64,000 nucleotides of DNA from Leidyana gryllorum EB-2025a (lineage: Eukaryota > Protista > Apicomplexa). Numbering within the stretch: the stretch's first letter is position 1; every line of letters starts with the position of its first letter. Under the pieces are notes generated by a model, which was not told where the DNA came from, searched no databases, and was given only the letters and a program-made list of their open reading frames with translations. The stretch is from contig JBLWGC010000104.1 in the NCBI GenBank assembly GCA_048772705.1, positions 62,001-126,000 on the forward strand, written 5' to 3'. Both the position numbers and the translations under genes were made by a program. Shown here piece after piece: positions 37,405 through 56,508 of this stretch.

Positions 37405-40400
37405 ATGCCTCACTCTGTCAAGTATTTCGTCACTCACGACCATACCTATGTTAACAATCCGCAGCTGCGCCTGTTTGTAGTTCACAATCCCCAAATCCCA
37501 GAGAACCGATATTGCGTCTTAGCCCTCTGTGATGCGGACCGCGGCCGCGATTTTGTCCTCCATTGGGGCGTTGGTATAGATTCGCCTCAGGAATGGACCG
37601 GTCCGCCAGCTACTGTGCTTCCCCCTTTCCAGCCGTCGACGACTGTGACCAAAGATTTTGCGACCACACCGTTCGTCACTGTGAATCAACTTGAACATGA
37701 TGGCGAGCTTCATCACTGGATCGACGACTTTATTGACGCTGAGAACCTTATCCCAACTCAGTGGAGAATGGTTATCATGAAGCTCAGTACGGCCATCCCA
37801 GTCGTGCTGGGTATCAACTTTGTGCTGAACTCTGGTAACGAATGGATTAAGAACGGGAACAACAATTTCAATATTGATCTGGGGAGTGTGGCCAATGCTG
37901 AGAATGAGCTGTTGAGTCTGGGGTCATTTCTGACGAAATACGCTCCGCAAGAGCCGGATGCAACTCTCAAATGGCGCGTCCGATCGGGCAAACGTACCTT
38001 CCTTCTGCAAGCTATGACTAATGCACGTAAGTTCATCCCTCCCTTAGCCGCCCGGATTTGCACTTCCTGCTGCCAGTGACTGAGCGTCTTGACCTTCTCG
38101 TGATCGCTACACATCCCAACAAGTTGGTGTTGCACTGGGGCGGTTGCGCGGGACCCAACTCTCCATGGCGTCGGTTGCCTACCCAGACTTTGGTGGAGGA
38201 CGATGCCCCCCAGAAATCTATAGTAGTCGATGATAAGGCCCTCCAAACGCCTTTCACATTCCCGGAAGCAGAGTTGTCTATGCAACTGTGTCGCATCAGT
38301 ATTCGAGCGGATGCCGTACCTCAGCTGATTTCGTTTGTTCTCAAAGAAGCTGCCAGTAACATCTGGCTCAAGAATGGCGATGTCGACTTTGTCCTCCAGC
38401 TGCCTCATCGGGCCGAGTGGAAAGCCAAACAGATCGAAGCCGAGGAACAGAGACGCAAGGAGGCCGAATTGGCTAACGCACGCCAGGAGCAGGAAGCCAA
38501 GAGATGGAGCCGACGTTTGGAGAGGTTTGCCGAGAATGCCATTGTTCGGGAGCAAGAAGCCACCATTGCATATGAAACGATCCATTTGTCGGATGACATT
38601 GGGGTAATGGATTGCGTCGTCTTATCAGAAGAGAATTCTGATGGGAAACATTTAATAATTCTTCGTATATACGCTGTTCTCCGGGAAGAATGTGTCTTAC
38701 ACTGGGGCTGCGTCGGGGTCGGGGGAGAGATCCAACGACGCCGAACCGGTGAATGGATCTGCCCTCCCGCCCACCTCTGCCCCGGAGGAACAGTCCCAGT
38801 CGATAAGAAGGCTGCGCAAACTCCCCTCACAGCCTCCCCCGAACACAAGTTTGAGTACCACCTCGAAATCAAATTCCCGGCGACCCAAGTTCCAGTCACT
38901 TCTTCCAGTGACATTGGACTGAGAGCGGAGTTTGGCGGTGTCTGCTTTGTGTTAAAAGAGGTCAACGGTGCCAGATGGTTCAAAGCCTCAGACACGAAAG
39001 ATATTCTGGTTCGTCTCCATCCAGTCACGGGTGTCCAATGGACCGGCACTCACCGTCCGCTTGTTTCACGCATCGTCGAGGCTGAAGTTGAATGGGATCA
39101 TATGACTCTGATGCACCGATATCATCTCTGTAACAGCATTCTGGACGATCATCTCAACTCACCCAACACTCATGCGACTCCAGAAACCATCGCCGAAGAA
39201 CACGATTTCTGGGCTTGGATCTATGTGTGGAACCGCTTCAGCTTCCTCTGTGTGAGTTATCAATTCACCGCCGAGGCGACTCAAATCAATTCATTTCTCC
39301 TCTGCAGTGGTTGGATTGGCAGCGAAGATACAACACCAAGCCCAAAGATCTCGCCCATGCAGCCGAAGTCTTGTCCTGTAAGGTGGCCCGGTGCTGGGCC
39401 ACCCATCCGCGTCATCGCGCTTGGATCAGAATGACACTGGCCACTATGGGCCGCGGCGGATCAGCCGGCCAAGCCATCCGTGACCGCATCCTCGATATTA
39501 TGCACAAACACAAAATACCCGAAACCGCTGGAAACTTCTACGAACAGTGGCACCAAAAGCTCCATAACAATACAACTCCAGATGACATTGGCATCTGTCT
39601 GGCAGTCATCAAATACCTCGAGACAAACAGTCTTCACGAGTACTGGAACGTTCTGAAAGCCCACGACATCTCCGCCGAGAAGTTGGCTTCCTATGAGCGA
39701 AAGATCACCCAACAGCCATATATGCCCCACTGTGATATTGGTGGTCTCATCTGGGATCTTCGCCAATACCTCGATATCCTCAAAGAGGTCCACGATGCTC
39801 TCGATCTCGGCGTAAGCACTCTTCAAATTGTCAATACCGCATCCGTGACCTCAGAAATCTGCTGGACGCGTTCGCCACATGCTGGCTGGAGACATCCAGG
39901 GCCGTCTCGACCACATTTGCCATGAAGCCACCCACGGACAGATTCAGAACTTCCAAGAGGCTACCAACCGAATGGGTCGGGTGAGTGCGGGTGGCGACCC
40001 TAAGAATATCTCTACCCATACTATACTCTCTTTCTGCAGATCTATGACGTCCGCAAAGCCATCATTAACCGTCTCAACGGGGGCGAAAGGAACGATAGCG
40101 TCATCCGTGATCTTCTACTCCTTGACTTCAGTCTGGAGTCCCTCCAAAGCACCTTGTTGCAGGGAGCCAACAAGAGTGAGGGCAGCAAAGAGAACTGGAT
40201 GTTGGTTCTCGGATGGTTTGTCGAACTGTGGTCGCTGCACAACCCCGCCGTGGAGGAATGGGCACGATTGGCCGCTGATTGGAGCTCACTCGGTCTCTCG
40301 GCTATCCGCCAGCAGTTCCACCCTGACGCGCGCCTGAACGCCTTACTTGTCAAAGCCCTCATTGACAGACTTACTCGGTGCGTTGGAGAAACTACTGACC

Positions 40401-42232
40401 TCTTCCAAGAGCGTTTGGGCCCCATGGCGAACTTCCTCGGCCAACAAGTTGATGTTGACCCGGCAAAACTCAACGTCTTTGTCGATGAAGTTCTTCGCGG
40501 ATCAGCTTTGTTTGCTATTTCTCTGGGCGTGAAACATTTGGAACCTCATATCCGAGCTGCAGCCGAACTACCTCCCTGGCAACTCATCAGTCTGGTGTCA
40601 AAGACCCGAGGAGTCCTGCAATCCGTAGCGACCTTGTCAAATATCCAAGACAAAGTCTTCGATCCCCCCACTATCCTGATTAGTGATGCTGTGAATGGCG
40701 AAGAAGAGATCCCGACTGGCGTTCAAGCAGTATTGGTGCGATCCGCAGCTGCTGCCCCCGACATTCTGTCTCACATTGCCGTGCGCGCGCGAAACGCACA
40801 CGTTCTGTTGGCTGTATGCTTCGACAGCAATGTCATCAGCAAATGGGTAAGATACCACCAGATCTCCGATCCCACTGTTTCTGACCTTAAATTACAGGAG
40901 AAGGAATACCAAAATGAATGGGTTGAGATTGGATTAATTATGGGCGGTGCAGACTTGTCTATCGAACGCTTTGAAGTACCTCAGTCCCAGCCGGAGGTGC
41001 TGCAGCGCCGCGGCAGCTTGACCAAGCAGACTTCTCGCAAGCTGTCTCAACCGTTTGATCGACAACTGACTCAGAGCAAGTTGGCTGAGCTTGATATGAC
41101 CACCAAGCTGAGCCGGGCTGCATCCATCAAGGATAATCAAGTAGTCGATTTGAGGACCCCGAGTGCCGATTACTTCATTACTGTGGACAAGTTCACCAGG
41201 GATCTGGTGGGAAGCAAGTCTGCGAATCTGCAGCTACTCAAGTCCAAGCTGCCGCACATGAAGACACCCCGAGCCTTCGCTCTTCCGTACGGTTCTCTGC
41301 AAAAGACGCTCTGCGCCGAGGAGAATCAGCACAAGCTGACCCAGTTGGAACGTATCTTGGGAGAGTTGGGTCCATCAATGTGTAACCAGGAAGCCTCTGC
41401 TTGCTTCCAAGAAGCCCAGCGTCTGTTGAAAGACTTGACGATGCCTTTGGAAATGCGTCAAGCTCTGAAGGAAATTTGGAGCGAAATAGAGCGCACCAAT
41501 CAGTCGCAGGACTCGGGTGTCGTGAAATCTACGCTCAAGAGTTTGTTTGAGAGCACCGGCGAAGAGAAGTGTTGGAAAGCCATCAAGGACGTGTGGCGCA
41601 GTATCTATGCGATGCGGCCGTGGGTATCTCTGGCGAAGGCGAACAGATCTTTCATAAGCTTGAATATGGCTGTGTTGGTTCAGGACCTGATGCCAGCTGA
41701 TTACGCTTTTGTGCTCCATAGCCGTAATCCGTTTGTGGCTGAGGATAGTGCGAAAGCGCGCGAGATGTACGGCGAGATCGTGGTGGGATTGGGAGAAGTG
41801 CTGGTGGCCAACTATCCAGGACGTGCGCTGAGCTGGAAGATGACTGAGAAAGATAGTGGACCTCAGGTGAGTTTCTGTCACTTGGCTCCAATCATCAATG
41901 TTGTGGTGCAGATCGTGGCTTTCCCGGCTAAGTCTCAGGCGTTGTTACCGGAAGCATCGCTGATCTTCCGCAGTGATTCCAACGGTGAAGATTTGGAAGG
42001 ATTCGCTGGGGCGGGATTGTTCGAGAGTGTTCCAGGGATAGCTCCCAAGTTAACATATGTTGGTTATCACAAAGTGCGGCTGATCAATGATCATTCCTGG
42101 AGAGACAATCTGCTGGGACGGATTGGAAAAGCTGCTTTCGCAGTCGAGGACGCATTCCAAAGTCCAATGGACATCGAAGGTGTAGTGTGTGGCGAGGACA
42201 TTATTATAGTCCAAGCACGGCCCCAAGTTTAG
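37405..42232 (+). CDS. GWD: Alpha-glucan water dikinase (R1/GWD)
   Basis: Three N-terminal LHWG carbohydrate-binding-like modules; TLMHRY, WQRRYNTKPK and EQWHQKLHNNTTPDD; phospho-His motif PDILSHIAVRARN; nucleotide-binding IFRSDSNGEDLEGFAGAGLFES; ends VQARPQV. Confidence 0.95.
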
Positions 42233-42251: not shown

Positions 42252-42657
42252 TTATTGCGGGTTACGTAATACACAAATAACGGAGTCGCCTCTGAGGAAC
42301 AGTCTAGCAATGTATCGATCCTTGTTAACAGTCCTTTTTATTTTCTTGGAACCATCGCCCGTTGGCACTCGCATTTGCTCTGTCCACATTTCGCGGGCGT
42401 CCGTGAGCAATAGATTGCAGTGACGGTCAAAGGCTTTGATCTGCACAGACGAGTGTATGTTAAAAAACACACGTATAGCTTACTCGACCGAGTATTTTCC
42501 GGTTATGGCGGCAGTTGACAAGGACCTGGCAGTTGTCCCTTACACAGGCAGCCAGTAATGATAGGGGACCCTCGGATGGAGTATCCTTATTAACAGGGGC
42601 AGTTTCTGCAGCAGCTGCACCAGCAGCTGGAGCAGAGGACGAGGGAACCGGGGGCAT
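42252..42657 (-). CDS. SNRPD2: Small nuclear ribonucleoprotein Sm D2
   Basis: GPLSLL...[26 protein letters not shown]...EMWTE and [23 protein letters not shown]; one intron. Confidence 0.95.
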
Positions 42658-42688
42658 TATGAGCAATTTCCAAAAGTTTTTCTTTGCA

Positions 42689-43393: not shown

Positions 43394-44942
43394 ATGATAG
43401 GTGTATTATTGTTGTTGTTCACAATGTTAGCTGACGCGAACTTTGGTCCCAGACCGCGAGGGAAATCTTTGGTACAGCGAAGGACCAGTCTATCGCTGAA
43501 CAAAGGTCATTTCTCTTCCCGCAAAGAAGCTGAGGGTAATGTCACCGTCAGTGATGTGCAGCTATTGCGTATTAATGGCTCTATTTTTCCCCAAACCGAC
43601 AAGAGGCTGGCTGTAGCAGCTTCCTCCAACTCGACCAGAAGAACAACAAGTCGTCGTCGGCATGTTTACCGACACCGGCGGCGTCGAAGGGGTTCGCGGG
43701 GGCCCCGCAGGTATTTCTCTACCGGTACAACTACTGAGCCTCGAGGATCATTTGGGGGCGTGCAGCCCTATGATGAGGATCTGAGGGAATGTACTGCTCG
43801 GAGATTAATATGCGATCCTCCGCCTGACCTTCACAATACGTATCCTGTATTTGGTGATTTGGTTACAGGGGAATGGCAGTGGTGGCAATTGACTTTTGGC
43901 CTGGTTCCGGACGAGATGAAGCCTAATCCCGAGGCAGCTCCGATCTGCAACAGCATTACGGGGGACGGGAGTAACATGAGTTCGGATGAATGCAAGCGGC
44001 ATTGCCAGAGTAGAATTGAAGAATGTTTGGTGGTGCGTCAAAATTGGAAGTATGACAGTTGGGCGAGTCAAATGGAGAACGCTGGGTCCACGACGAGTCA
44101 GCCGGTGTGCGAGTTGGACTACAATGGGGTGTTCGACTGTGTGTATCACGAATTGTTACAATGGTGCGGTGGAGCGTGTTTCTCGGTTGTGGATGGTCGT
44201 GAGACACGGTGTATGATTCCGTTTCAGTCGTGCAAAGACAATCCGGATGGCTACCACCCGGACGAAGCCCCTTTAGTAGATCAGTTTTCTGACGACCCTG
44301 GCGGTAGTGGCGGCGACACTGAGACAGACCCCGACCCCGGGAACGGCGGCAACACTGACGGCGACGACACTGATGGGGACGACGATCCCGGGGATACTAC
44401 GAACACTGATGGGGACCCGACTACCACCAGCACGGAAGAGAGTACATCAACAACGGTTTCGTCCACGTCTGAAGAGACAGAGGCCACCACCATGACGGTA
44501 AGCTGAGAGCGGTTGTCCTTTCGGAGGCGGGTGCGGGGGGGTTGAGGTGGATAGAAAAAGGCACGCACACACACACACACTGCAGGTGGAGGAGGAGGCT
44601 AAGGGCATGGGAAAGGCAGCGGAGTTGCTGGGAGGTGCAATTGTATTGGTGGCAGCGTCAGCAGCGGGGGGGTATTGTTGCCATTGCTGCAACAGCTCTA
44701 TAATTGATGTGAAGGGTATGCGGGACTTTGCCCAGAACACAGCAGATGTAAGTGGTTTGAGTTCTCTTCTTCAGCAGATCCTTTCCATTTGATAGTGTGC
44801 TGACGACGCTGATCGTCTGATGGATGAGGAAAAAGATATGAGAGAGGAGGTGCGAAGAAACAGGGCTTTACAACACAAGACTTTACTCACCCATAGCCAT
44901 CTGTTTGTCCCGAGTGCCACACCATCACCTGATGTAGTTTAG
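43394..44942 (+). CDS. Type-I membrane protein with a 12-Cys ectodomain, D/G/T-rich stalk and acidic tail (paralogue A)
   Basis: Signal peptide MIGVLLLLFTMLADA; Cys-rich domain; intron 44498-44585; TM LLGGAIVLVAASAAGGYCCHCC; tail GMRDFAQ...DDADRLMDEEKDMREE. Confidence 0.8.
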
Positions 44943-44943
44943 C

Positions 44944-46002
44944 ATGTATACGTTACCGTTATGGTTCTTGTTGGATCTGATTCAAATTGTTTTGACCAAT
45001 GGTGTGAGAGAACGCTGGGCTCCCCGAACGTGTGGTACCGCTCAGGAGCTCTGTTCGCCTCCCCCCAATTTGCACGGGTGGGTCTATGACCGGACACACG
45101 GCCGCCCCACCACTCAGCCCACCGTGCCCAGAGAGCCCGTCGGGAAGGTGCCGGCTGGCTATCGGCCCAATCCGGACGCCATGCCGGCCTGCGATACAAG
45201 TTGGTCAGCTCAACAAGCGATCAGTGACGAGTGGTGCCGAGCCCAGTGCTACGTACGCAAATCGGACTGTCTCGAGGTCCCTCAACAATGGGTCTTTGAG
45301 GCGTGGTATATGGACAGCGAAAAGCTCCCCGGAAACTCTTCCTGCGCACGAACTCACGCAAACGGCATATATGACTGCACCTACGCCGACATACTGACAA
45401 TGTGTGGCGTCCACTGCTTCTCTTCTACCTGCGGCAAATGGGTCCGGTGTTTATTACCCCTCAACTATTGCCCAGATGACGACCAATGTCCAGGAGACGT
45501 GATCGCCACTCCCCTCCCCCCTGCAACTACACAACTACTCACAGAACCAGAAGACCCAACCACACAACAGGGCGACTCCACCACATACTCCGACACTTCA
45601 ACATCCATTCCAATTGATGATGACGACCCCCCAACGTCGCCGCCGCCGCCCCCTTTTTGGACCACGAGTACAAAGAGAGATGAACTCTCTGGAGGCCAAT
45701 TGGTCGGCGGCGCGCTTGTTGTCGCTGCCGCCGCCTCTGCCAGTGGCGTTTGTATCTACAGAAGTTCAGTGGCCACCGAAGGTATGAGAGACTTTGCTCA
45801 GACAGTATTGGAGGTACGGCGCCCCACTTACCGCTCCCTTTCCTAAAAACCCTCTCAGGAAGTCGATGATGCAGGCAGAGCCATTGACGAAGAAGAAGCT
45901 CTCAAGGAGGAGGCGCAGGCGAATCGAGCTCGCCAAATGCGCAGATTCAGCACCCAGATGCAGACAATCATACCACCACCCCAACAAACCATGCAGCCTT
46001 AG
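44944..46002 (+). CDS. Type-I membrane protein with a 12-Cys ectodomain, T/P-rich stalk and acidic tail (paralogue B)
   Basis: Signal peptide MYTLPLWFLLDLIQIVLTNG; homologous Cys domain; TM LVGGALVVAAAASASGVCIY; tail GMRDFAQ...DDAGRAIDEEEALKEE after an intron. Confidence 0.8.
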
Positions 46003-46167
46003 CACAAACCAACTGGGTCACTGAGACACAGAGAGACACACAATTAATAGATCGGAGACGCCGTCTCCCGTCTCCCGTCTCCTTACCCTCCCATCCACTT
46101 AACTCAACAAACAACAGCAGATCTTCCTTCTTTGCCTTCTTCTCTCTTCGGCCTTCGATTTCAAACA

Positions 46168-47292
46168 ATGAAGATGTTTGTTCCTCTCGCATTCCTCTTG
46201 GCCACCGTTGCCGCCACTCAAGTGACTTTGGAAGATGTTTACGGACCCGCTCCTCGAGTTGAAAACATGGCTCCCATCGCTGGTGGTCTCCGCTCTCGCG
46301 CTGCTCGTCCCGCTTCCTACACTAAGCGTCGTACCGCTGAGCAGTGTGACTTCCCTTTCGAGATCCTCCTCGTCCAAGATCTCACTGCTTCCTTCAACGA
46401 CAACTTTGATGCGATGGTCCAAACCCAATTGCCTCAAATGTTCTCTGCCCTCGGCTCTTCTCACCCAGACACAACTTACGGCGCCCTCACTTTCCGGGAC
46501 AAACCGGTCCAGCCCCTCGGAAACCCTCCTACCGACTTCTGCCAGCAATTCGGTCTCGACTTCACCGCCAACACCACTGCCATCACATCTTTCTATGAGC
46601 CCCTCCGTCGTGTGGGCGGTGGAGATCCCGCCGAGAATCAGTTTGGTGCCCTTATCGCGTCCATCAGATCCAACCAGATCTCCTGGGCTTCTAATGCAGA
46701 GTCCACCAAGTTGATTGTTTTGGTCACTGATGCTCCTCCTCATTTCGAAGGAGACGAAGGCAACACCTTCGGTATGAAGACTGCCACTGGTCTCTTCAGT
46801 GATGAAACTGCCGAGAAGGACTGCCTCGAATACTATTACCCTTCCCCCGACCAGGTCTTGGCCAACTTGAAGGGATTGGAGGCTTATCTTGCAGTCCTTG
46901 TCTACGACCCCGAGTACTGGAACGGTCTCCCCGCCAAGTCCTGGCAGTGGTTCAACCGTTTCATCGGACAGACCGATGACTTTGCCAATCTCTCTGCAAA
47001 CGATCAATCTGACTTCTGGACTCAATTGAGCAAAGTTGTCGAGTTTATCGAGAATCTCGAGTGTGTTGACTCCACCACCGCTACCCCTGTCGAGCCCACT
47101 GTCACTCCGGTTGGCACTGAGCAAACTCCTGAGGCTCAAACCACTTTCATCCTTCCGCCTCCCCTCACCCGGACTATTCCGGCTACTGATGAGTGTCAAG
47201 AAACCATTATCTGCGAGGAGGACGTCTTGATCAAGATCGGGTTCCCCCCTGACAATCTCAATGTTGTTGTTGATGGAAAGCAAATTGCCTAA
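46168..47292 (+). CDS. Secreted integrin-beta I-like (vWA) domain protein
   Basis: Signal peptide MKMFVPLAFLLATVAA; PFEILLVQDLTASFNDN (MIDAS-like DxTxS), FRDKP, GGGDPAEN, ISW, KLIVLVTDAPPHFEGD and YYPSPDQV match the motif order of the integrin beta I domain; T/P stalk; no TM; intronless. Confidence 0.85.
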   Translation: MKMFVPLAFLLATVAATQVTLEDVYGPAPRVENMAPIAGGLRSRAARPASYTKRRTAEQCDFPFEILLVQDLTASFNDNFDAMVQTQLPQMFSALGSSHPDTTYGALTFRDKPVQPLGNPPTDFCQQFGLDFTANTTAITSFYEPLRRVGGGDPAENQFGALIASIRSNQISWASNAESTKLIVLVTDAPPHFEGDEGNTFGMKTATGLFSDETAEKDCLEYYYPSPDQVLANLKGLEAYLAVLVYDPEYWNGLPAKSWQWFNRFIGQTDDFANLSANDQSDFWTQLSKVVEFIENLECVDSTTATPVEPTVTPVGTEQTPEAQTTFILPPPLTRTIPATDECQETIICEEDVLIKIGFPPDNLNVVVDGKQIA

Positions 47293-47451: not shown

Positions 47452-49019
47452 TCAATAGTGCCATGAAGCCCAGTATCCAATCCCCATAACACACACCAAT
47501 GTTCCCAATACTCCCAGATTTCGCTGCCGTTTGGTCACATTCGGCATCATCCGTCTCAAGGAAGTCAATTTTGTGGTCACCAAACCCTTTGAAGCCTGAC
47601 CTGCTGGCCATCCTTCTCCAGAGATCTCTGCTACCGTCTCTTCCGATTCTAACGCCTCCAACGAGCTGGAAGTCTCACCACTGCTCTCTGTAGTTGTCTC
47701 CACGGCTGCGGTATCAACCCCAAGCATGGTTTTGGTAGTGATGGGTCTGGTTGTTGCTGTGACTGTGATGGGGCTGGGGGGTTTTGTAGAAGCACTCGTT
47801 GCGGTGCTGTTGACCGTGGAGGTTCGCGACCGCGGAAGTCGGTGGGATGTTGATTTTTGAGCCTTGGTACTCTTCACAGTGGTAGCCAGGGTGCTGTCCG
47901 GTTTTGTCGTCCTCGAAACAGAAGGAAGCGATAGAGGAAGGGGTGGGGGTGAGGTGAGCGGGGACGAGGTCACAGTTGTGGTTGTTGGGGTACTGGTGGT
48001 AGTTGGGGTACTGGTGGATGTGCTCGAAGATGGCGGCAGTGTCACCGCCTGTAACATAACAGGGGTCACCGGATGCAGATATGGAATGACAGCGGTGCTC
48101 ACGGGCTGCTGATGGGACAGCACCACAGCTGGAGCCTGTTGCGCAACGAAGGTCGTGCCTTGACTATGCCCCACGTGGGCTCCCGAGTTGGGCGGCCAAA
48201 CAACATTCGGGTTGACTGTCCAGATAGATTGCGGCGCCGGAAGACTCATGCTTTGAACCAACCTTAGGTCTGCAGCTGCGTCAGCCTCCTCACCCGATGG
48301 TCCGGCCGATAATACGTCTTCGGATTGTTCCTCCAAGCTGTCGTGATTCACCCGCGCCTCTAACTCACCCGCTGCCTCAACTCCATCTTGCTTTTGCGAC
48401 TCGGGATCCGCGACGATCAGAGGAACGCCATTTATGCTCTCCACAGACCTTTGAGTGTCTCGAATCTCTGATGATTCCTGCGTCGTGCGATCGTCTTCCG
48501 CATTCGCGCCGAGGCGAGAACCTTCAAGGGAATCTGCTGGAGGTTCCCTGCTTTTTGGTGCCTCCTCCGGTGCAACAGACTCGGTCACCGAGTACAGGAC
48601 AGTCTGAGTGCTCACATCTGGCCGCTGAGTCGTTTCTTCCGTGCCCTTGATCGACGGTACATCCACAATCAGGGTGCTTGACTTGCGTGCTTCGTCTTTT
48701 GCGGTCTGACTTCGAAGCGTGGTCTTCGTCCGTGGTGGGACAGTGGTAGTCTTATTGCCACTCTGAATCAGCCATTAAGCGGAAAGTTCGGTCTGTGTAC
48801 CTTGGAGTCCTTCATGGGGGTTTCAACCACTGTGATGGGCTCGCTTTCTGGCTCCGGTGGTGCCTCTGCAGTGCTAATAACGGCCTGGGCAGCAGGTTGC
48901 TGCTGGTCTTCCGAGGCTTGCATCAGCCCACCACGGGGTTCTTCCGGTGTGATGGCGACATCCTGCGCAGCTACTGCGCATACAAGAGCAATAATGACAG
49001 CGATCGCGCACGTTCGCAT
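47452..49019 (-). CDS. Mucin-like T/S/P-rich surface protein with a C-terminal hydrophobic anchor
   Basis: Signal peptide MRTCAIAVIIALVCAVAA; one intron; long T/S/P tracts; ends LGVLGTLVCVMGIGYWASWHY. Confidence 0.8.
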
Positions 49020-54605: not shown

Positions 54606-54937
54606 GGCATCGAAAACGTTGGTTCCCAGGTTTAGACAAACTTGACAGCAGCTAGTTTGAACTATCTATTTCCAATAACAACAAACCAATCAACGAACAG
54701 CGGAGACGGCGTGTATCCCACCTCTTCACACAAAGCTGACTCAAAATTATCCCTCTTTTGCCTTTACAATATTGTTACTTAAATAGATACTAACTCAATT
54801 TGTTGTTGATCGTTCTAATTATACTGGTGATCGACGTTTGAAGAGTTTTAGTACTCCCATTGGATAACTGGTTTGTGTTGCCAGTTTTTGGTCTGAAACG
54901 CCTAAGTGCTGTTTTTCAGTCTTTGGTATTCAATATC

Positions 54938-56508
54938 ATGATCGACACACGAGTGCCGCCCCTACCGAACATGTCTAAGCTCTCCTCCTCTATTTCTGTC
55001 AAGTCCACTTCTTCTGAGTTGAATAGCTTTCGGACCGATGACTCGAGAGCACACTATACTTCTGCTGCTCTGTACCGAGCCGACTGGCACTTCCACCAAC
55101 AAGACGAACTTGTAACACCTTGCCAGAATCGAAAGAGAACCGACTTCGCCCACTTGCCCCCTACTTCGGAGAATACATCCACCACTGGAAACGAAGCTCG
55201 ACTCTTGTCCGATTTCTGCAATTGGACCGCCAAGTCCTCTCAATCACCGTTGAGCTCATACGAAGGAAGTGTGCCTCCCCCACCTCTCCCGGTCCCCACT
55301 GGTGGTAATAAGAAAACACAGTACCACAAGACCAAAATGTGCCCCTGGCACCGTGAAGGCAAATGCTTCATGGGTTCAGCTTGTAACTATGCTCATTCAC
55401 GCGATGAATTGAGGCCAAAACCTGATCTTTCAAAGACAAAGCTATGTCCTGAGATAATGAAGGTGTGTACACACACGTGTGCTAAATTGCGTGCCAAGTG
55501 TCAAATGAACTCGAAACCCTTGTTGCTGCTGCATTTCGGAACTGCACCTCATTTCGTGTCATTTTCAGGGTCGGCCCTGTACGAGGCCCTGTTGCCGCTT
55601 TGCGCACGACTTTGTGGAACTCCGTGCGACGGCTGCCTTCTTCAAGACCCGTCTCTGCAAGTATTGGCAACGAGGAAACTGTCCTGCGGGGCGCGACTGT
55701 CGACATGCGGTGAGTCCCAGCATTGGGTGGTGAGCGATCTGTCATGATCTGATGACAGCATGGTCGAGATGAGGTTCGGGCACCTGCGATTCCGCCGGCG
55801 GAGCCAATCTCTGGATTGACAGAAACAACCACGGCTTCGTCGGCGAGAGGCGGTTTCAATAGCTCTTCGGGATCCTTTGCTCCGAGTCCACGCAACGGTG
55901 GGCGCAAGCGAGTGGACGGGCTTTATAGTGATGGTTGTTCCACAACGATGATACCGCCTGCTGCAAACCAGTTGCCATCGCCTTCCTTCTTGTCAGCATC
56001 CGCCGCCTCAACACCAAGCCCTAATGGGCGTCGTCAAGGTTTGCCTTCCCTCCAGCAATGCGCTGCCCTATTGAATGGGGGCGGTTGTGGAGGTGATGAG
56101 GGCGCCTTGAACCTGTTGAAGAGCTGGATCAGTCAGGAGGTTGAAAGGCAGGTGCAGATCCGTCAGCAGGCGACCGAGAATTCTGTGAGCGAGGCTGACG
56201 AGACCTGTTTCCTGCCTGCCGATGTGTTGCAAGGACTGAACACAACGACGCCAGCTCACAGTCGTGGCTGGTTGGGTGCCGGTAGATCTCCGGATGCCAC
56301 TACTCAAAGCGGAGCGAGTCCGGCCACGTTTGCAGCAGCGGTACAGTCCCTGGTGGCAAGCACGACAACGTGCGACGACCGCACCCCCACTCATTTGCTC
56401 TTGAAGACCCTCGGTGACCTCTCGGCCACGGCAGGTTGGGGCGCGCCTCCCTCTTCTATATTAGAGAAAGATTTACCTTCGTTCCCCCCAATGCCTACTA
56501 CCTATTGA
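54938..56508 (+). CDS. Triple CCCH zinc-finger RNA-binding protein
   Basis: KTKMCPWHREGKCFMGSACNYAH; KTKLCPEIMK/GRPCTRPCCRFAH; KTRLCKYWQRGNCPAGRDCRHA/H across two introns; low-complexity C-terminus. Confidence 0.9.

What the first reader, a model, noticed from the sequence alone, without database searches (positions are those of the whole stretch)
43394..46002. Tandem paralogues defining an unrecognised 12-cysteine ectodomain with a conserved acidic tail
The ~150-aa domains align with 12 shared Cys and conserved motifs (CxPPPxLH, G.VP...PNP.A.P.C, C...C......CL.V.Q.W....W, NG..DC.Y...L..CG..CFS...RC..P...C). I cannot match this to EGF, TSP1, PAN/apple, 6-Cys or SRS spacing. Both proteins have a mucin-like stalk and a GGA-containing, Ala-rich TM resembling rhomboid-cleaved apicomplexan adhesins. 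Both have juxtamembrane Cys and a tail GMRDFAQ...DDAxRxxDEExxx(R/K)EE, interrupted by an intron at the same position. Tail conservation despite ectodomain divergence implies a shared cytoplasmic partner. Inference: a new adhesin or receptor family.
Basis: partly seen in the sequence, partly recalled or inferred. Interest (0 to 1): 0.8.

Follow-up and report, generated by a model that had tools for sequence, protein, structure and literature searches.

The report
Gregarine-only cysteine-rich surface protein pair
Two neighbouring genes in a gregarine parasite genome encode single-pass membrane proteins whose cysteine-rich outer domain matches no described family. Uncharacterised relatives exist in five insect gregarines, so they are candidates for the still unidentified surface adhesins of these parasites.

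Summary
Window 43394-44942 (gene A, 3 exons) and 44944-46002 (gene B, 2 exons) are tandem paralogues. Each encodes a signal peptide, a roughly 150-aa Cys-rich domain, an acidic Thr/Pro/Asp-rich stalk, a Gly/Ala-rich TM helix, juxtamembrane Cys, and a GMRDF-x8-DD acidic tail split by a phase-0 intron at the same residue.

The Cys domains are 31% identical (E 4e-24). They have no Pfam or PDB sequence match, and AlphaFold2 gives no usable model (pLDDT 36-39).

The family is not unique to this genome. A profile search of 1.84 billion proteins found five true relatives, and a word search found a sixth. All are uncharacterised proteins of insect eugregarines: Gregarina niphandrodes GNI_026800, Blabericola migrator (two), two Protomagalhaensia species, and a contig from a locust RNA run. 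All share the architecture, except that the two Blabericola ORFs end before the DD. Ten Cys are invariant across the family, and the window pair shares two more.

The intronless or transcript-derived orthologues keep the same DF-x8-DD spacing, which supports the splice models.

The family fails the TRAP/MIC2 membership tests: no TSP1 or vWA domain and no Trp in the tail.

Adhesion, rhomboid shedding, palmitoylation and a tail partner remain inference. The scan noted this same stretch once more (s1-598591), not on other DNA.

The parts
43394..44497 (+). Gene A exon 1. Signal peptide MIGVLLLLFTMLADA (43394-43438); Arg-rich low-complexity N-terminal region (43439-43789); Cys domain; acidic Thr/Asp/Gly stalk (44234-44497).
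   Evidence: ORF and translation. Kyte-Doolittle 1.61 for residues 1-19. First in-frame ATG.
43790..44233 (+). Gene A 12-Cys ectodomain module, first to last Cys (C133-C280).
   Evidence: BLASTP against B, E 4e-24. Family profile A3 hit E 8e-50 in the own genome. Cys positions.
44498..44585 (+). Gene A intron 1 (88 nt, GTAAGC...CTGCAG), with a (CA)n run at 44565-44580.
   Evidence: Exon 1 and the TM exon are in different frames. This is the only in-frame AG for the GTAAG donor.
44586..44747 (+). Gene A exon 2. TM helix LLGGAIVLVAASAAGGY (44625-44675), CCHCC cluster (44676-44690), GMRDF motif (44715-44729).
   Evidence: Kyte-Doolittle 1.82. Aligns with the TM, CC[HRY]C and G[IM][KRQ]DF of the orthologues.
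44748..44795 (+). Gene A intron 2 (48 nt, GTAAGT...GATAG), phase 0, six residues after DF.
   Evidence: The tail profile reads across it.
44796..44942 (+). Gene A exon 3. Acidic tail CADDADRLMDEEKDMREEVRRNRALQHK... plus stop TAG (44940-44942).
   Evidence: BLASTP against B's last exon, E 7e-10. DD lies 8 residues after DF, as in the orthologues.
44944..45813 (+). Gene B exon 1. Hydrophobic N-terminus MYTLPLWFLLDLIQIVLTNG; Cys domain; Pro/Thr/Asp stalk; TM LVGGALVVAAAASASGVCI (45700-45756); GMRDF (45781-45795).
   Evidence: ORF. Kyte-Doolittle 2.07 for the TM and 1.32 for the N-terminus. Alignments.
45031..45471 (+). Gene B Cys module, C30-C176. It has the 12 Cys shared with A plus C163; a further Cys, C182, lies at 45487-45489.
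   Evidence: Family profile hit E 1.9e-47.
45814..45858 (+). Gene B intron (45 nt, GTACGG...CTCAG), phase 0, at the same position as A intron 2.
   Evidence: The tail profile reads across it with one TAA inside.
45859..46002 (+). Gene B exon 2. Tail EVDDAGRAIDEEEALKEEAQANRARQMRR... plus stop TAG (46000-46002).

Best explanation
Genes A and B are a lineage-specific tandem duplicate of an unnamed protein family that has so far been found only in eugregarines.

Shown by sequence and comparison: each encodes a type I membrane protein. A signal peptide takes it into the secretory pathway. A compact domain built on 10 invariant Cys (12 in this species) sits on an acidic Thr/Pro-rich stalk outside the membrane. 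One Gly/Ala-rich helix spans the membrane. A 55-65-residue cytoplasmic tail carries the family motif G[IM][KRQ]DF, then DD eight residues later, then a charged stretch.

Inferred:
- The Cys domain is disulphide-bonded and binds an extracellular ligand, such as host gut surface or a partner cell, on the trophozoite surface.
- The stalk is O-glycosylated.
- The CC[HRY]C cluster at the cytoplasmic end of the helix is palmitoylated.
- The conserved tail motif recruits a conserved cytoplasmic partner, either a sorting factor or a cortical/cytoskeletal one.
- The small-residue helix may allow rhomboid shedding or helix-helix pairing.
For: - Paralogy.
- Only two copies in the 15.5-Mb genome.
- The host genome is a eugregarine. 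The best COPB2 hits are Blabericola migrator (49%) and Gregarina sp. (51%), against about 42% for dinoflagellates.
- A profile search of 1.84e9 representatives gave five true relatives, E 2.8e-14 to 8e-8. A sixth came from the word search.
- Sources of the relatives: G. niphandrodes GNI_026800, Blabericola migrator (two), Protomagalhaensia sp. and P. wolfi, and a contig from run SRR5171258. That run is a locust/Antonospora transcriptome (PMC7643970).
- All share SP, Cys domain, T-rich stalk, G/A TM and a Cys cluster. All but Blabericola P0123 (GMNEA) have G[IM][KRQ]DF. The four with complete tails have DF-x8-DD.
- The G. niphandrodes gene is one uninterrupted 936-nt ORF, so ectodomain, TM and tail form one protein.
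- The Blabericola and Protomagalhaensia sequences come from hand-picked trophozoites (PMC8051059), so the family is transcribed in that stage.
- A and B group together in the family tree, support 90/88. They share two extra Cys and the tail intron, which indicates a duplication within this lineage.
- Three rhomboid loci exist in the genome.
Against: - There is no functional, localisation or expression datum for this organism. No sequencing run was listed.
- The fold is unknown: pLDDT 36 and 39, and Foldseek found nothing.
- The distal tail is not significantly similar to the orthologues' tails.
- B has lost the Cys cluster, keeping one Cys.
- The tail has no Trp, so coupling of the TRAP/GAC type is not indicated.
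- A's stop and B's ATG are 1 nt apart, so B's start codon and its independent transcription are unverified.
- The 115-aa Arg-rich stretch before A's Cys domain has no counterpart in any relative and could hide an unrecognised intron.
Confidence: 0.6

Rival explanations
1. Escorter or cargo receptor of the secretory pathway, in the manner of Toxoplasma MIC6. The Cys domain would hold a soluble adhesin, for example the secreted integrin-beta-like vWA protein encoded 165 nt downstream. The conserved tail motif would be a sorting signal, not a motor link.
For: The gene immediately downstream (46132-47292) encodes a signal-peptide protein with an Integrin_beta vWA match, PF00362, 28 bits against a cut-off of 24.8. 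The ORF shows no obvious TM. The tail has a short conserved motif near the membrane, as sorting signals do.
Against: The adjacency is not conserved. The G. niphandrodes orthologue has RNA-polymerase subunit genes and unannotated genes as neighbours. No YxxPhi motif is present in either tail. No binding test was run.
Confidence: 0.15
2. Cell-cell recognition protein for gamont pairing (syzygy) or gamete contact, not host adhesion.
For: All named source species (Gregarina, Blabericola, Protomagalhaensia) belong to eugregarines whose trophozoites associate early; this rests on general knowledge and was not tested here. The family has one or two copies per genome, which suits a recognition pair. 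Orthologues are transcribed in trophozoites.
Against: No stage-resolved data exist. The restricted distribution may simply reflect search sensitivity and sampling. The large search used only a two-sequence profile.
Confidence: 0.12
3. True member of the TRAP/MIC2 gliding-adhesin family, cleaved by ROM4 and linked to actomyosin through its acidic tail.
For: It has a signal peptide, a single TM rich in Gly/Ala, and a charged tail with net charge of about -4 in both (counted by hand from the translations). Rhomboid genes are present. Boisard et al. 2022 (PMC9250747) report that canonical adhesins are poorly conserved in gregarines and that other domains might substitute.
Against: No TSP1 or vWA domain at E <= 1 in any member. 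No Trp anywhere in the tails of A, B or the orthologues. No YxxPhi. In the orthologues the small residues cluster in the cytoplasmic half of the helix, not at the outer end.
Confidence: 0.05
4. Annotation artefact: the small downstream ORFs are not exons, and the genes encode secreted Cys-rich proteins without an anchor.
For: There is no RNA evidence for this genome. The introns are very short (45-88 nt).
Against: B's TM and GMRDF lie in the same ORF as its ectodomain. All six relatives carry TM and the post-TM motif in one ORF with the ectodomain. The splice sites are canonical, and splicing restores DF-x8-DD exactly. The terminal exons are homologous to each other, E 7e-10.
Confidence: 0.03

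Closest known systems
Gregarina niphandrodes GNI_026800 (XP_011129058, UniProt A0A023BBA1; 'hypothetical protein') and its transcriptome orthologues in Blabericola migrator and Protomagalhaensia spp.
   Same: Same family. All have the 10 invariant Cys with spacing C-x43-48-C-x11-21-C-x3-C-x6-7-C-x31-37-C-x8-11-C-x3-C-x9-11-C-x6-C. All have the PNPxAxPxC, QxW..W and NGxxDC motifs, a T-rich stalk, a G/A-rich TM and a Cys cluster. The tail motif G[IM][KRQ]DF-x8-DD is present in GNI_026800 and both Protomagalhaensia orthologues.
   Different: Only 25-32% identical to the window proteins. The window pair has one extra shared Cys pair, tail introns (GNI_026800 is intronless), a tandem duplication, and a different distal tail. 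Blabericola P0123 has GMNEA instead of the tail motif, and both Blabericola ORFs end before the DD. None of these proteins has been studied: a full-text search for the locus tag found nothing.
TRAP/MIC2-family micronemal adhesins of Plasmodium and Toxoplasma
   Same: Overall chassis: signal peptide, adhesive ectodomain, spacer, a single small-residue-rich TM, and a short charged cytoplasmic tail. Rhomboid proteases are present in the genome.
   Different: No TSP1 or vWA domain and no Trp in the tail. The tail motif (GMRDF...DD) is unrelated. See the membership test.
Toxoplasma MIC6-type escorters and other lineage-specific apicomplexan Cys-rich type I proteins (EGF, PAN/Apple, 6-Cys, SRS)
   Same: Small disulphide-rich ectodomain modules on a type I anchor, encoded in tandem arrays and restricted to one lineage.
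   Different: No Pfam model for EGF, PAN, 6-Cys (s48/45), SRS or any other family reaches E <= 1. The Cys spacing differs. There is no internal repeat: hhalign of the two halves gives probability 0.65%.

Membership tests
TRAP/MIC2-type gliding adhesins (definition as in Boisard et al. 2022, PMC9250747) | Ectodomain with one or more TSP1 and/or vWA domains | tested here: not met
   A Pfam scan of A, B and five orthologues at E <= 1 found no TSP1, vWA or any other family.
TRAP/MIC2-type gliding adhesins (definition as in Boisard et al. 2022, PMC9250747) | Signal peptide and a single TM domain (type I) | tested here: met
   Each has a hydrophobic N-terminus and exactly one internal hydrophobic window. 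Kyte-Doolittle scores are 1.82 (A) and 2.07 (B).
TRAP/MIC2-type gliding adhesins (definition as in Boisard et al. 2022, PMC9250747) | Short charged cytoplasmic tail with aromatic residues, classically a subterminal Trp; sometimes YxxPhi | tested here: not met
   The tails are charged and net acidic, but there is no Trp in any tail of the family and no YxxPhi. The C-termini are ...SPDVV and ...QTMQP.
TRAP/MIC2-type gliding adhesins (definition as in Boisard et al. 2022, PMC9250747) | Intramembrane cleavage by a rhomboid protease | not testable with these tools
   The TM is rich in Gly, Ala and Ser, and three rhomboid loci exist in the genome. Cleavage itself needs an assay.
Unnamed eugregarine 10-Cys family (GNI_026800-like) | Ten invariant Cys plus the PNPxAxPxC, QxW..W and NGxxDC motifs | tested here: met
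   Alignments A2 and A3. Spacing table. HMM E-values 2.8e-14 to 8e-8 against a library of 1.84e9 proteins.
Unnamed eugregarine 10-Cys family (GNI_026800-like) | C-terminal G/A-rich TM, juxtamembrane Cys, and G[IM][KRQ]DF followed by DD eight residues later | tested here: met
   Alignments A4 and A6. The feature is met in A and B only after splicing. B keeps one Cys of the cluster.
Described Cys-rich extracellular domains (EGF, TSP1, PAN/Apple, 6-Cys, SRS, others in Pfam) | Significant match to the family's profile | tested here: not met
   the only row is DUF7796, E 0.045, in one member. PDB sequence profiles found nothing meaningful. Fold-level comparison was not possible because the model is too poor.

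The most novel reading that the evidence does not exclude
This family is the missing substrate or host adhesin of insect eugregarine trophozoites. It would be a surface protein with a fold not yet seen. It would couple to the cortex through a palmitoylated G/A helix and the GMRDF-DD tail, instead of the Trp-tail/GAC route of TRAP/MIC2. It would be released by a rhomboid protease. That would give gregarine gliding or attachment its first molecular handle.
Probability: 0.12. Interest if true: 0.8.

Novelty: new variant of a known kind. Interest (0 to 1): 0.5.

Why it matters
Gregarines glide and attach, yet their canonical apicomplexan adhesins are poorly conserved, and alternative adhesins have been proposed (Boisard et al. 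2022, PMC9250747). This is a conserved, trophozoite-expressed type I protein family with an undescribed Cys-rich domain and its own tail motif. It is a concrete candidate that can be tested with antibodies, a rhomboid cleavage assay and tail pull-downs.

It also defines a domain that could be added to the family databases. At present the public members are all 'hypothetical' or unnamed.

Tried and rejected
- Word search with B's 300-aa ORF found nothing, not even itself, so this genome's proteins are not in that collection.
- ESM Atlas feature search with B's domain and with the Protomagalhaensia domain gave no usable hit.
- PDB sequence search with 2-row and 8-row profiles returned only a nanobody at E 0.11, and then nothing.
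- AlphaFold2 with the 2-row and 8-row alignments gave pLDDT 35.9 and 38.8. Foldseek against PDB gave one row at E 9. I did not run the VIA or Atlas fold searches, because a model this poor gives meaningless matches.
- Internal duplication of the domain (a twin CxxxC idea) is not supported: hhalign of the halves gave probability 0.65%.
- Two metagenome scans found no true relative. The only hits, L013 and L014, lie in a 1023-aa bacterial-type ORF and are pattern coincidences.
- An orthologue-only tail HMM against the six-frame window gave E 0.48 for A exon 3 and did not list B exon 2. I therefore do not claim distal-tail homology to the orthologues beyond the DD spacing.
- A search for other genes in this genome sharing the TM/tail chassis found none. 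The best other hit had E 0.22.
- Sequencing runs: none was listed.
- No DNA record was found for the Blabericola proteins, so possible intron retention there could not be checked.
- No paper mentions GNI_026800.
All searches and alignments used single exons by reference.
Full report
**What is there**

The region holds two head-to-tail genes on the + strand.

Gene A:
- Exon 1 (43394-44497) opens with the first in-frame ATG and a hydrophobic signal-like peptide, MIGVLLLLFTMLADA.
- A 115-aa Arg-rich stretch follows, with no counterpart in any relative.
- Next comes a module with 12 Cys (C133-C280).
- Then comes a 90-aa stalk: Asp 21%, Thr 21%, Gly 13%.
- The ORF then hits a stop. The TM-encoding ORF is in another frame.
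- A GTAAG donor at 44498 and the only in-frame AG (44584-85) define an 88-nt intron.
- Exon 2 (44586-44747) encodes LLGGAIVLVAASAAGGY-CCHCC-NSSIIDVK-GMRDF-AQNTAD.
- A 48-nt GTAAGT..TAG intron follows.
- Exon 3 (44796-44939) encodes CADDADRLMDEEKDMREEVRRNRALQHK....

Gene B:
- It starts at 44944, one nucleotide after A's stop codon.
- One exon (to 45813) carries the hydrophobic N-terminus, the Cys module, a Pro/Thr/Asp stalk, the TM helix LVGGALVVAAAASASGVCI and GMRDFAQTVLE.
- A 45-nt GTACG..CAG intron leads to the tail exon (45859-45999), EVDDAGRAIDEEEALKEEAQANRARQMRR....
- Both tail introns are phase 0 and lie six residues after DF.

**Is it more than chance?**

Yes.
- The Cys modules are 31% identical over 160 aa, E 4e-24.
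- The TM exons are 43% identical, E 0.005.
- The last exons are 41% identical, E 7e-10.

**Organism and copy number**

- The window lies in a 15.5-Mb assembly of 237 contigs.
- The COPB2 ORF in the window is closest to Blabericola migrator (49%) and Gregarina sp. (51%). Dinoflagellates, Perkinsus and Cryptosporidium are at about 40-43%.
- The genome is therefore that of a eugregarine, distinct from the sampled ones.
- Searches of the whole assembly with either protein, with the 8-row domain profile and with the TM/tail profile find only these two genes.

**Relatives**

- Pfam has nothing at E <= 1 for A or B.
- The word-index search found nothing.
- The claim rests on absence of relatives, so I spent the exhaustive HMMER search on a profile of the two domains. 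Among 1.84 billion representatives, six scored E <= 0.001. Five are true relatives, E 2.8e-14 to 8e-8. The sixth is a repeat protein and is noise.
- A word search with the family alignment added one more relative.

The relatives are:
- Gregarina niphandrodes GNI_026800, a 'hypothetical protein'
- two Blabericola migrator proteins
- one Protomagalhaensia sp. protein
- one P. wolfi protein
- a protein on a 5.4-kb Logan contig of run SRR5171258

That run is a transcriptome of the locust/Antonospora locustae project (PMC7643970). A locust gregarine is the probable source, which is an inference.

All relatives show the same architecture:
- a signal peptide
- a domain with ten invariant Cys and the motifs PNPxAxPxC, QxW..W and NGxxDC
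- a Thr-rich stalk
- a Gly/Ala-rich TM helix ending in a Cys cluster (CC[HRY]C in five of the six; Blabericola P0123 has CCHS)
- G[IM][KRQ]DF, except in Blabericola P0123, which has GMNEA
- in the four with complete tails, DD exactly eight residues after DF, then a charged stretch

Further points:
- None of seven members has a Pfam match.
- No PDB sequence matches the profile.
- The Cys spacing signature is C-x43-48-C-x11-21-C-x3-C-x6-7-C-x31-37-C-x8-11-C-x3-C-x9-11-C-x6-C.
- There is no internal repeat.

**Splice models**

No RNA data could be found for this genome: no run was listed. The support is comparative.
- The G. niphandrodes gene is one uninterrupted 936-nt ORF.
- The transcript-derived orthologues are continuous.
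- So ectodomain, TM and tail form one polypeptide in the family.
- Splicing at the canonical sites restores DF-x8-DD in both A and B, the same spacing as in four orthologues.
- The family TM/tail profile aligns across both introns, positions 2-98 and 2-92.
- The two Blabericola ORFs end shortly after DF+6 and continue there with Val, which a GTN codon would encode. This would fit a retained intron at the same site. I could not check it, because no DNA record exists.

Every search used single exons by reference.

**Limits of tail conservation**

An HMM built only from the orthologues' post-DF tails scores A's exon 3 at E 0.48 and does not list B's exon 2. Beyond the DD, therefore, the tail is conserved between the paralogues but not demonstrably across the family.

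**Evolution**

- A and B are sisters in the family tree, support 90/88, on saturated branches.
- They share two Cys that no orthologue has: one upstream of the first invariant Cys and one 5-6 residues before the NG motif. A paired gain suggests these two form a disulphide with each other (inference).
- B has a further pair (C163, C182), has lost A's first intron, and has lost most of the Cys cluster.

**Fold**

AlphaFold2 with 2 or 8 rows gives pLDDT 36 and 39. Foldseek finds nothing. The fold remains unknown.

**How it most likely works**

Shown: a type I topology and a conserved family.

Inferred:
- a disulphide-rich ligand-binding head on a glycosylated stalk at the trophozoite surface
- palmitoylation of the Cys cluster
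- a tail motif that binds a conserved cytoplasmic factor
- a small-residue helix that could be a rhomboid substrate or a helix-packing interface; three rhomboid loci exist

Orthologue transcripts come from hand-picked trophozoites (PMC8051059), so the family is expressed in the gliding and feeding stage.

**Comparison with the known**

The chassis resembles TRAP/MIC2-type adhesins, but membership fails on two defining features. There is no TSP1 or vWA domain, and there is no Trp and no YxxPhi in the tail. The criteria are as summarised by Boisard et al. 2022. That paper also notes that canonical adhesins are poorly conserved in gregarines, which is why an undescribed conserved surface family is of interest.

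**Verdict**

This is a real family, unnamed and restricted to eugregarines as far as can be seen. The 'new family' reading is supported. The functional reading is plausible but untested. Interest 0.5.

Noticed in passing
window 44940-44946: Gene A's stop codon (TAG, 44940-44942) and gene B's ATG (44944-44946) are separated by a single base. B's promoter and 5'UTR must therefore lie inside gene A, or the two genes are co-transcribed. The orthologue contig from a locust RNA run also carries four ORFs on 5.4 kb (L007), which hints at overlapping or long transcripts in gregarines.
   Followed up: partly
window 46132-47292 (+): An ORF with a signal-peptide-like start (MKMFVPLAFLLATVAA) and an Integrin_beta vWA match (PF00362, E 2.3e-6, 28 bits, cut-off 24.8) lies 165 nt downstream of gene B. 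Earlier scan notes list many integrin-beta-like adhesins elsewhere in this genome.
   Followed up: partly
window 43439-43789 (+): Gene A has a 115-aa Arg-rich, low-complexity stretch (...RRRHVYRHRRRRRGSRGPRR...) between its signal peptide and its Cys domain. It is absent from gene B and from all orthologues. It could be a propeptide with basic cleavage sites, or it could hide an unrecognised intron.
   Followed up: no
window 44565-44580: A (CA)n microsatellite lies inside gene A's first intron, directly before the acceptor site.
   Followed up: no
window 42252-42666 (-): An Sm/LSM-domain gene in two ORF pieces lies on the opposite strand, between the glucan water dikinase gene and gene A (PF01423, E 4.4e-9 for 42252-42470).
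   Followed up: partly
window 40154-42232 (+): The C-terminal part of an alpha-glucan water dikinase (PF22973, E 1e-27; PF01326, E 8e-18). This is consistent with a parasite that stores amylopectin.
   Followed up: partly
L007:1348-2901 and window 54860-55747: On the locust-run contig, the gene next to orthologue P0125 is a CCCH zinc-finger protein. Its finger region is 46% identical over 72 aa (E 5e-16) to the CCCH gene 9 kb downstream in the window. This is a weak hint of conserved neighbourhood, because CCCH fingers are common.
   Followed up: partly
window 47452-48666 (-): A 404-aa Ser/Thr/Pro-rich ORF with a C-terminal hydrophobic segment and no Pfam match. It is another probable mucin-like membrane protein in the same cluster.
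   Followed up: no
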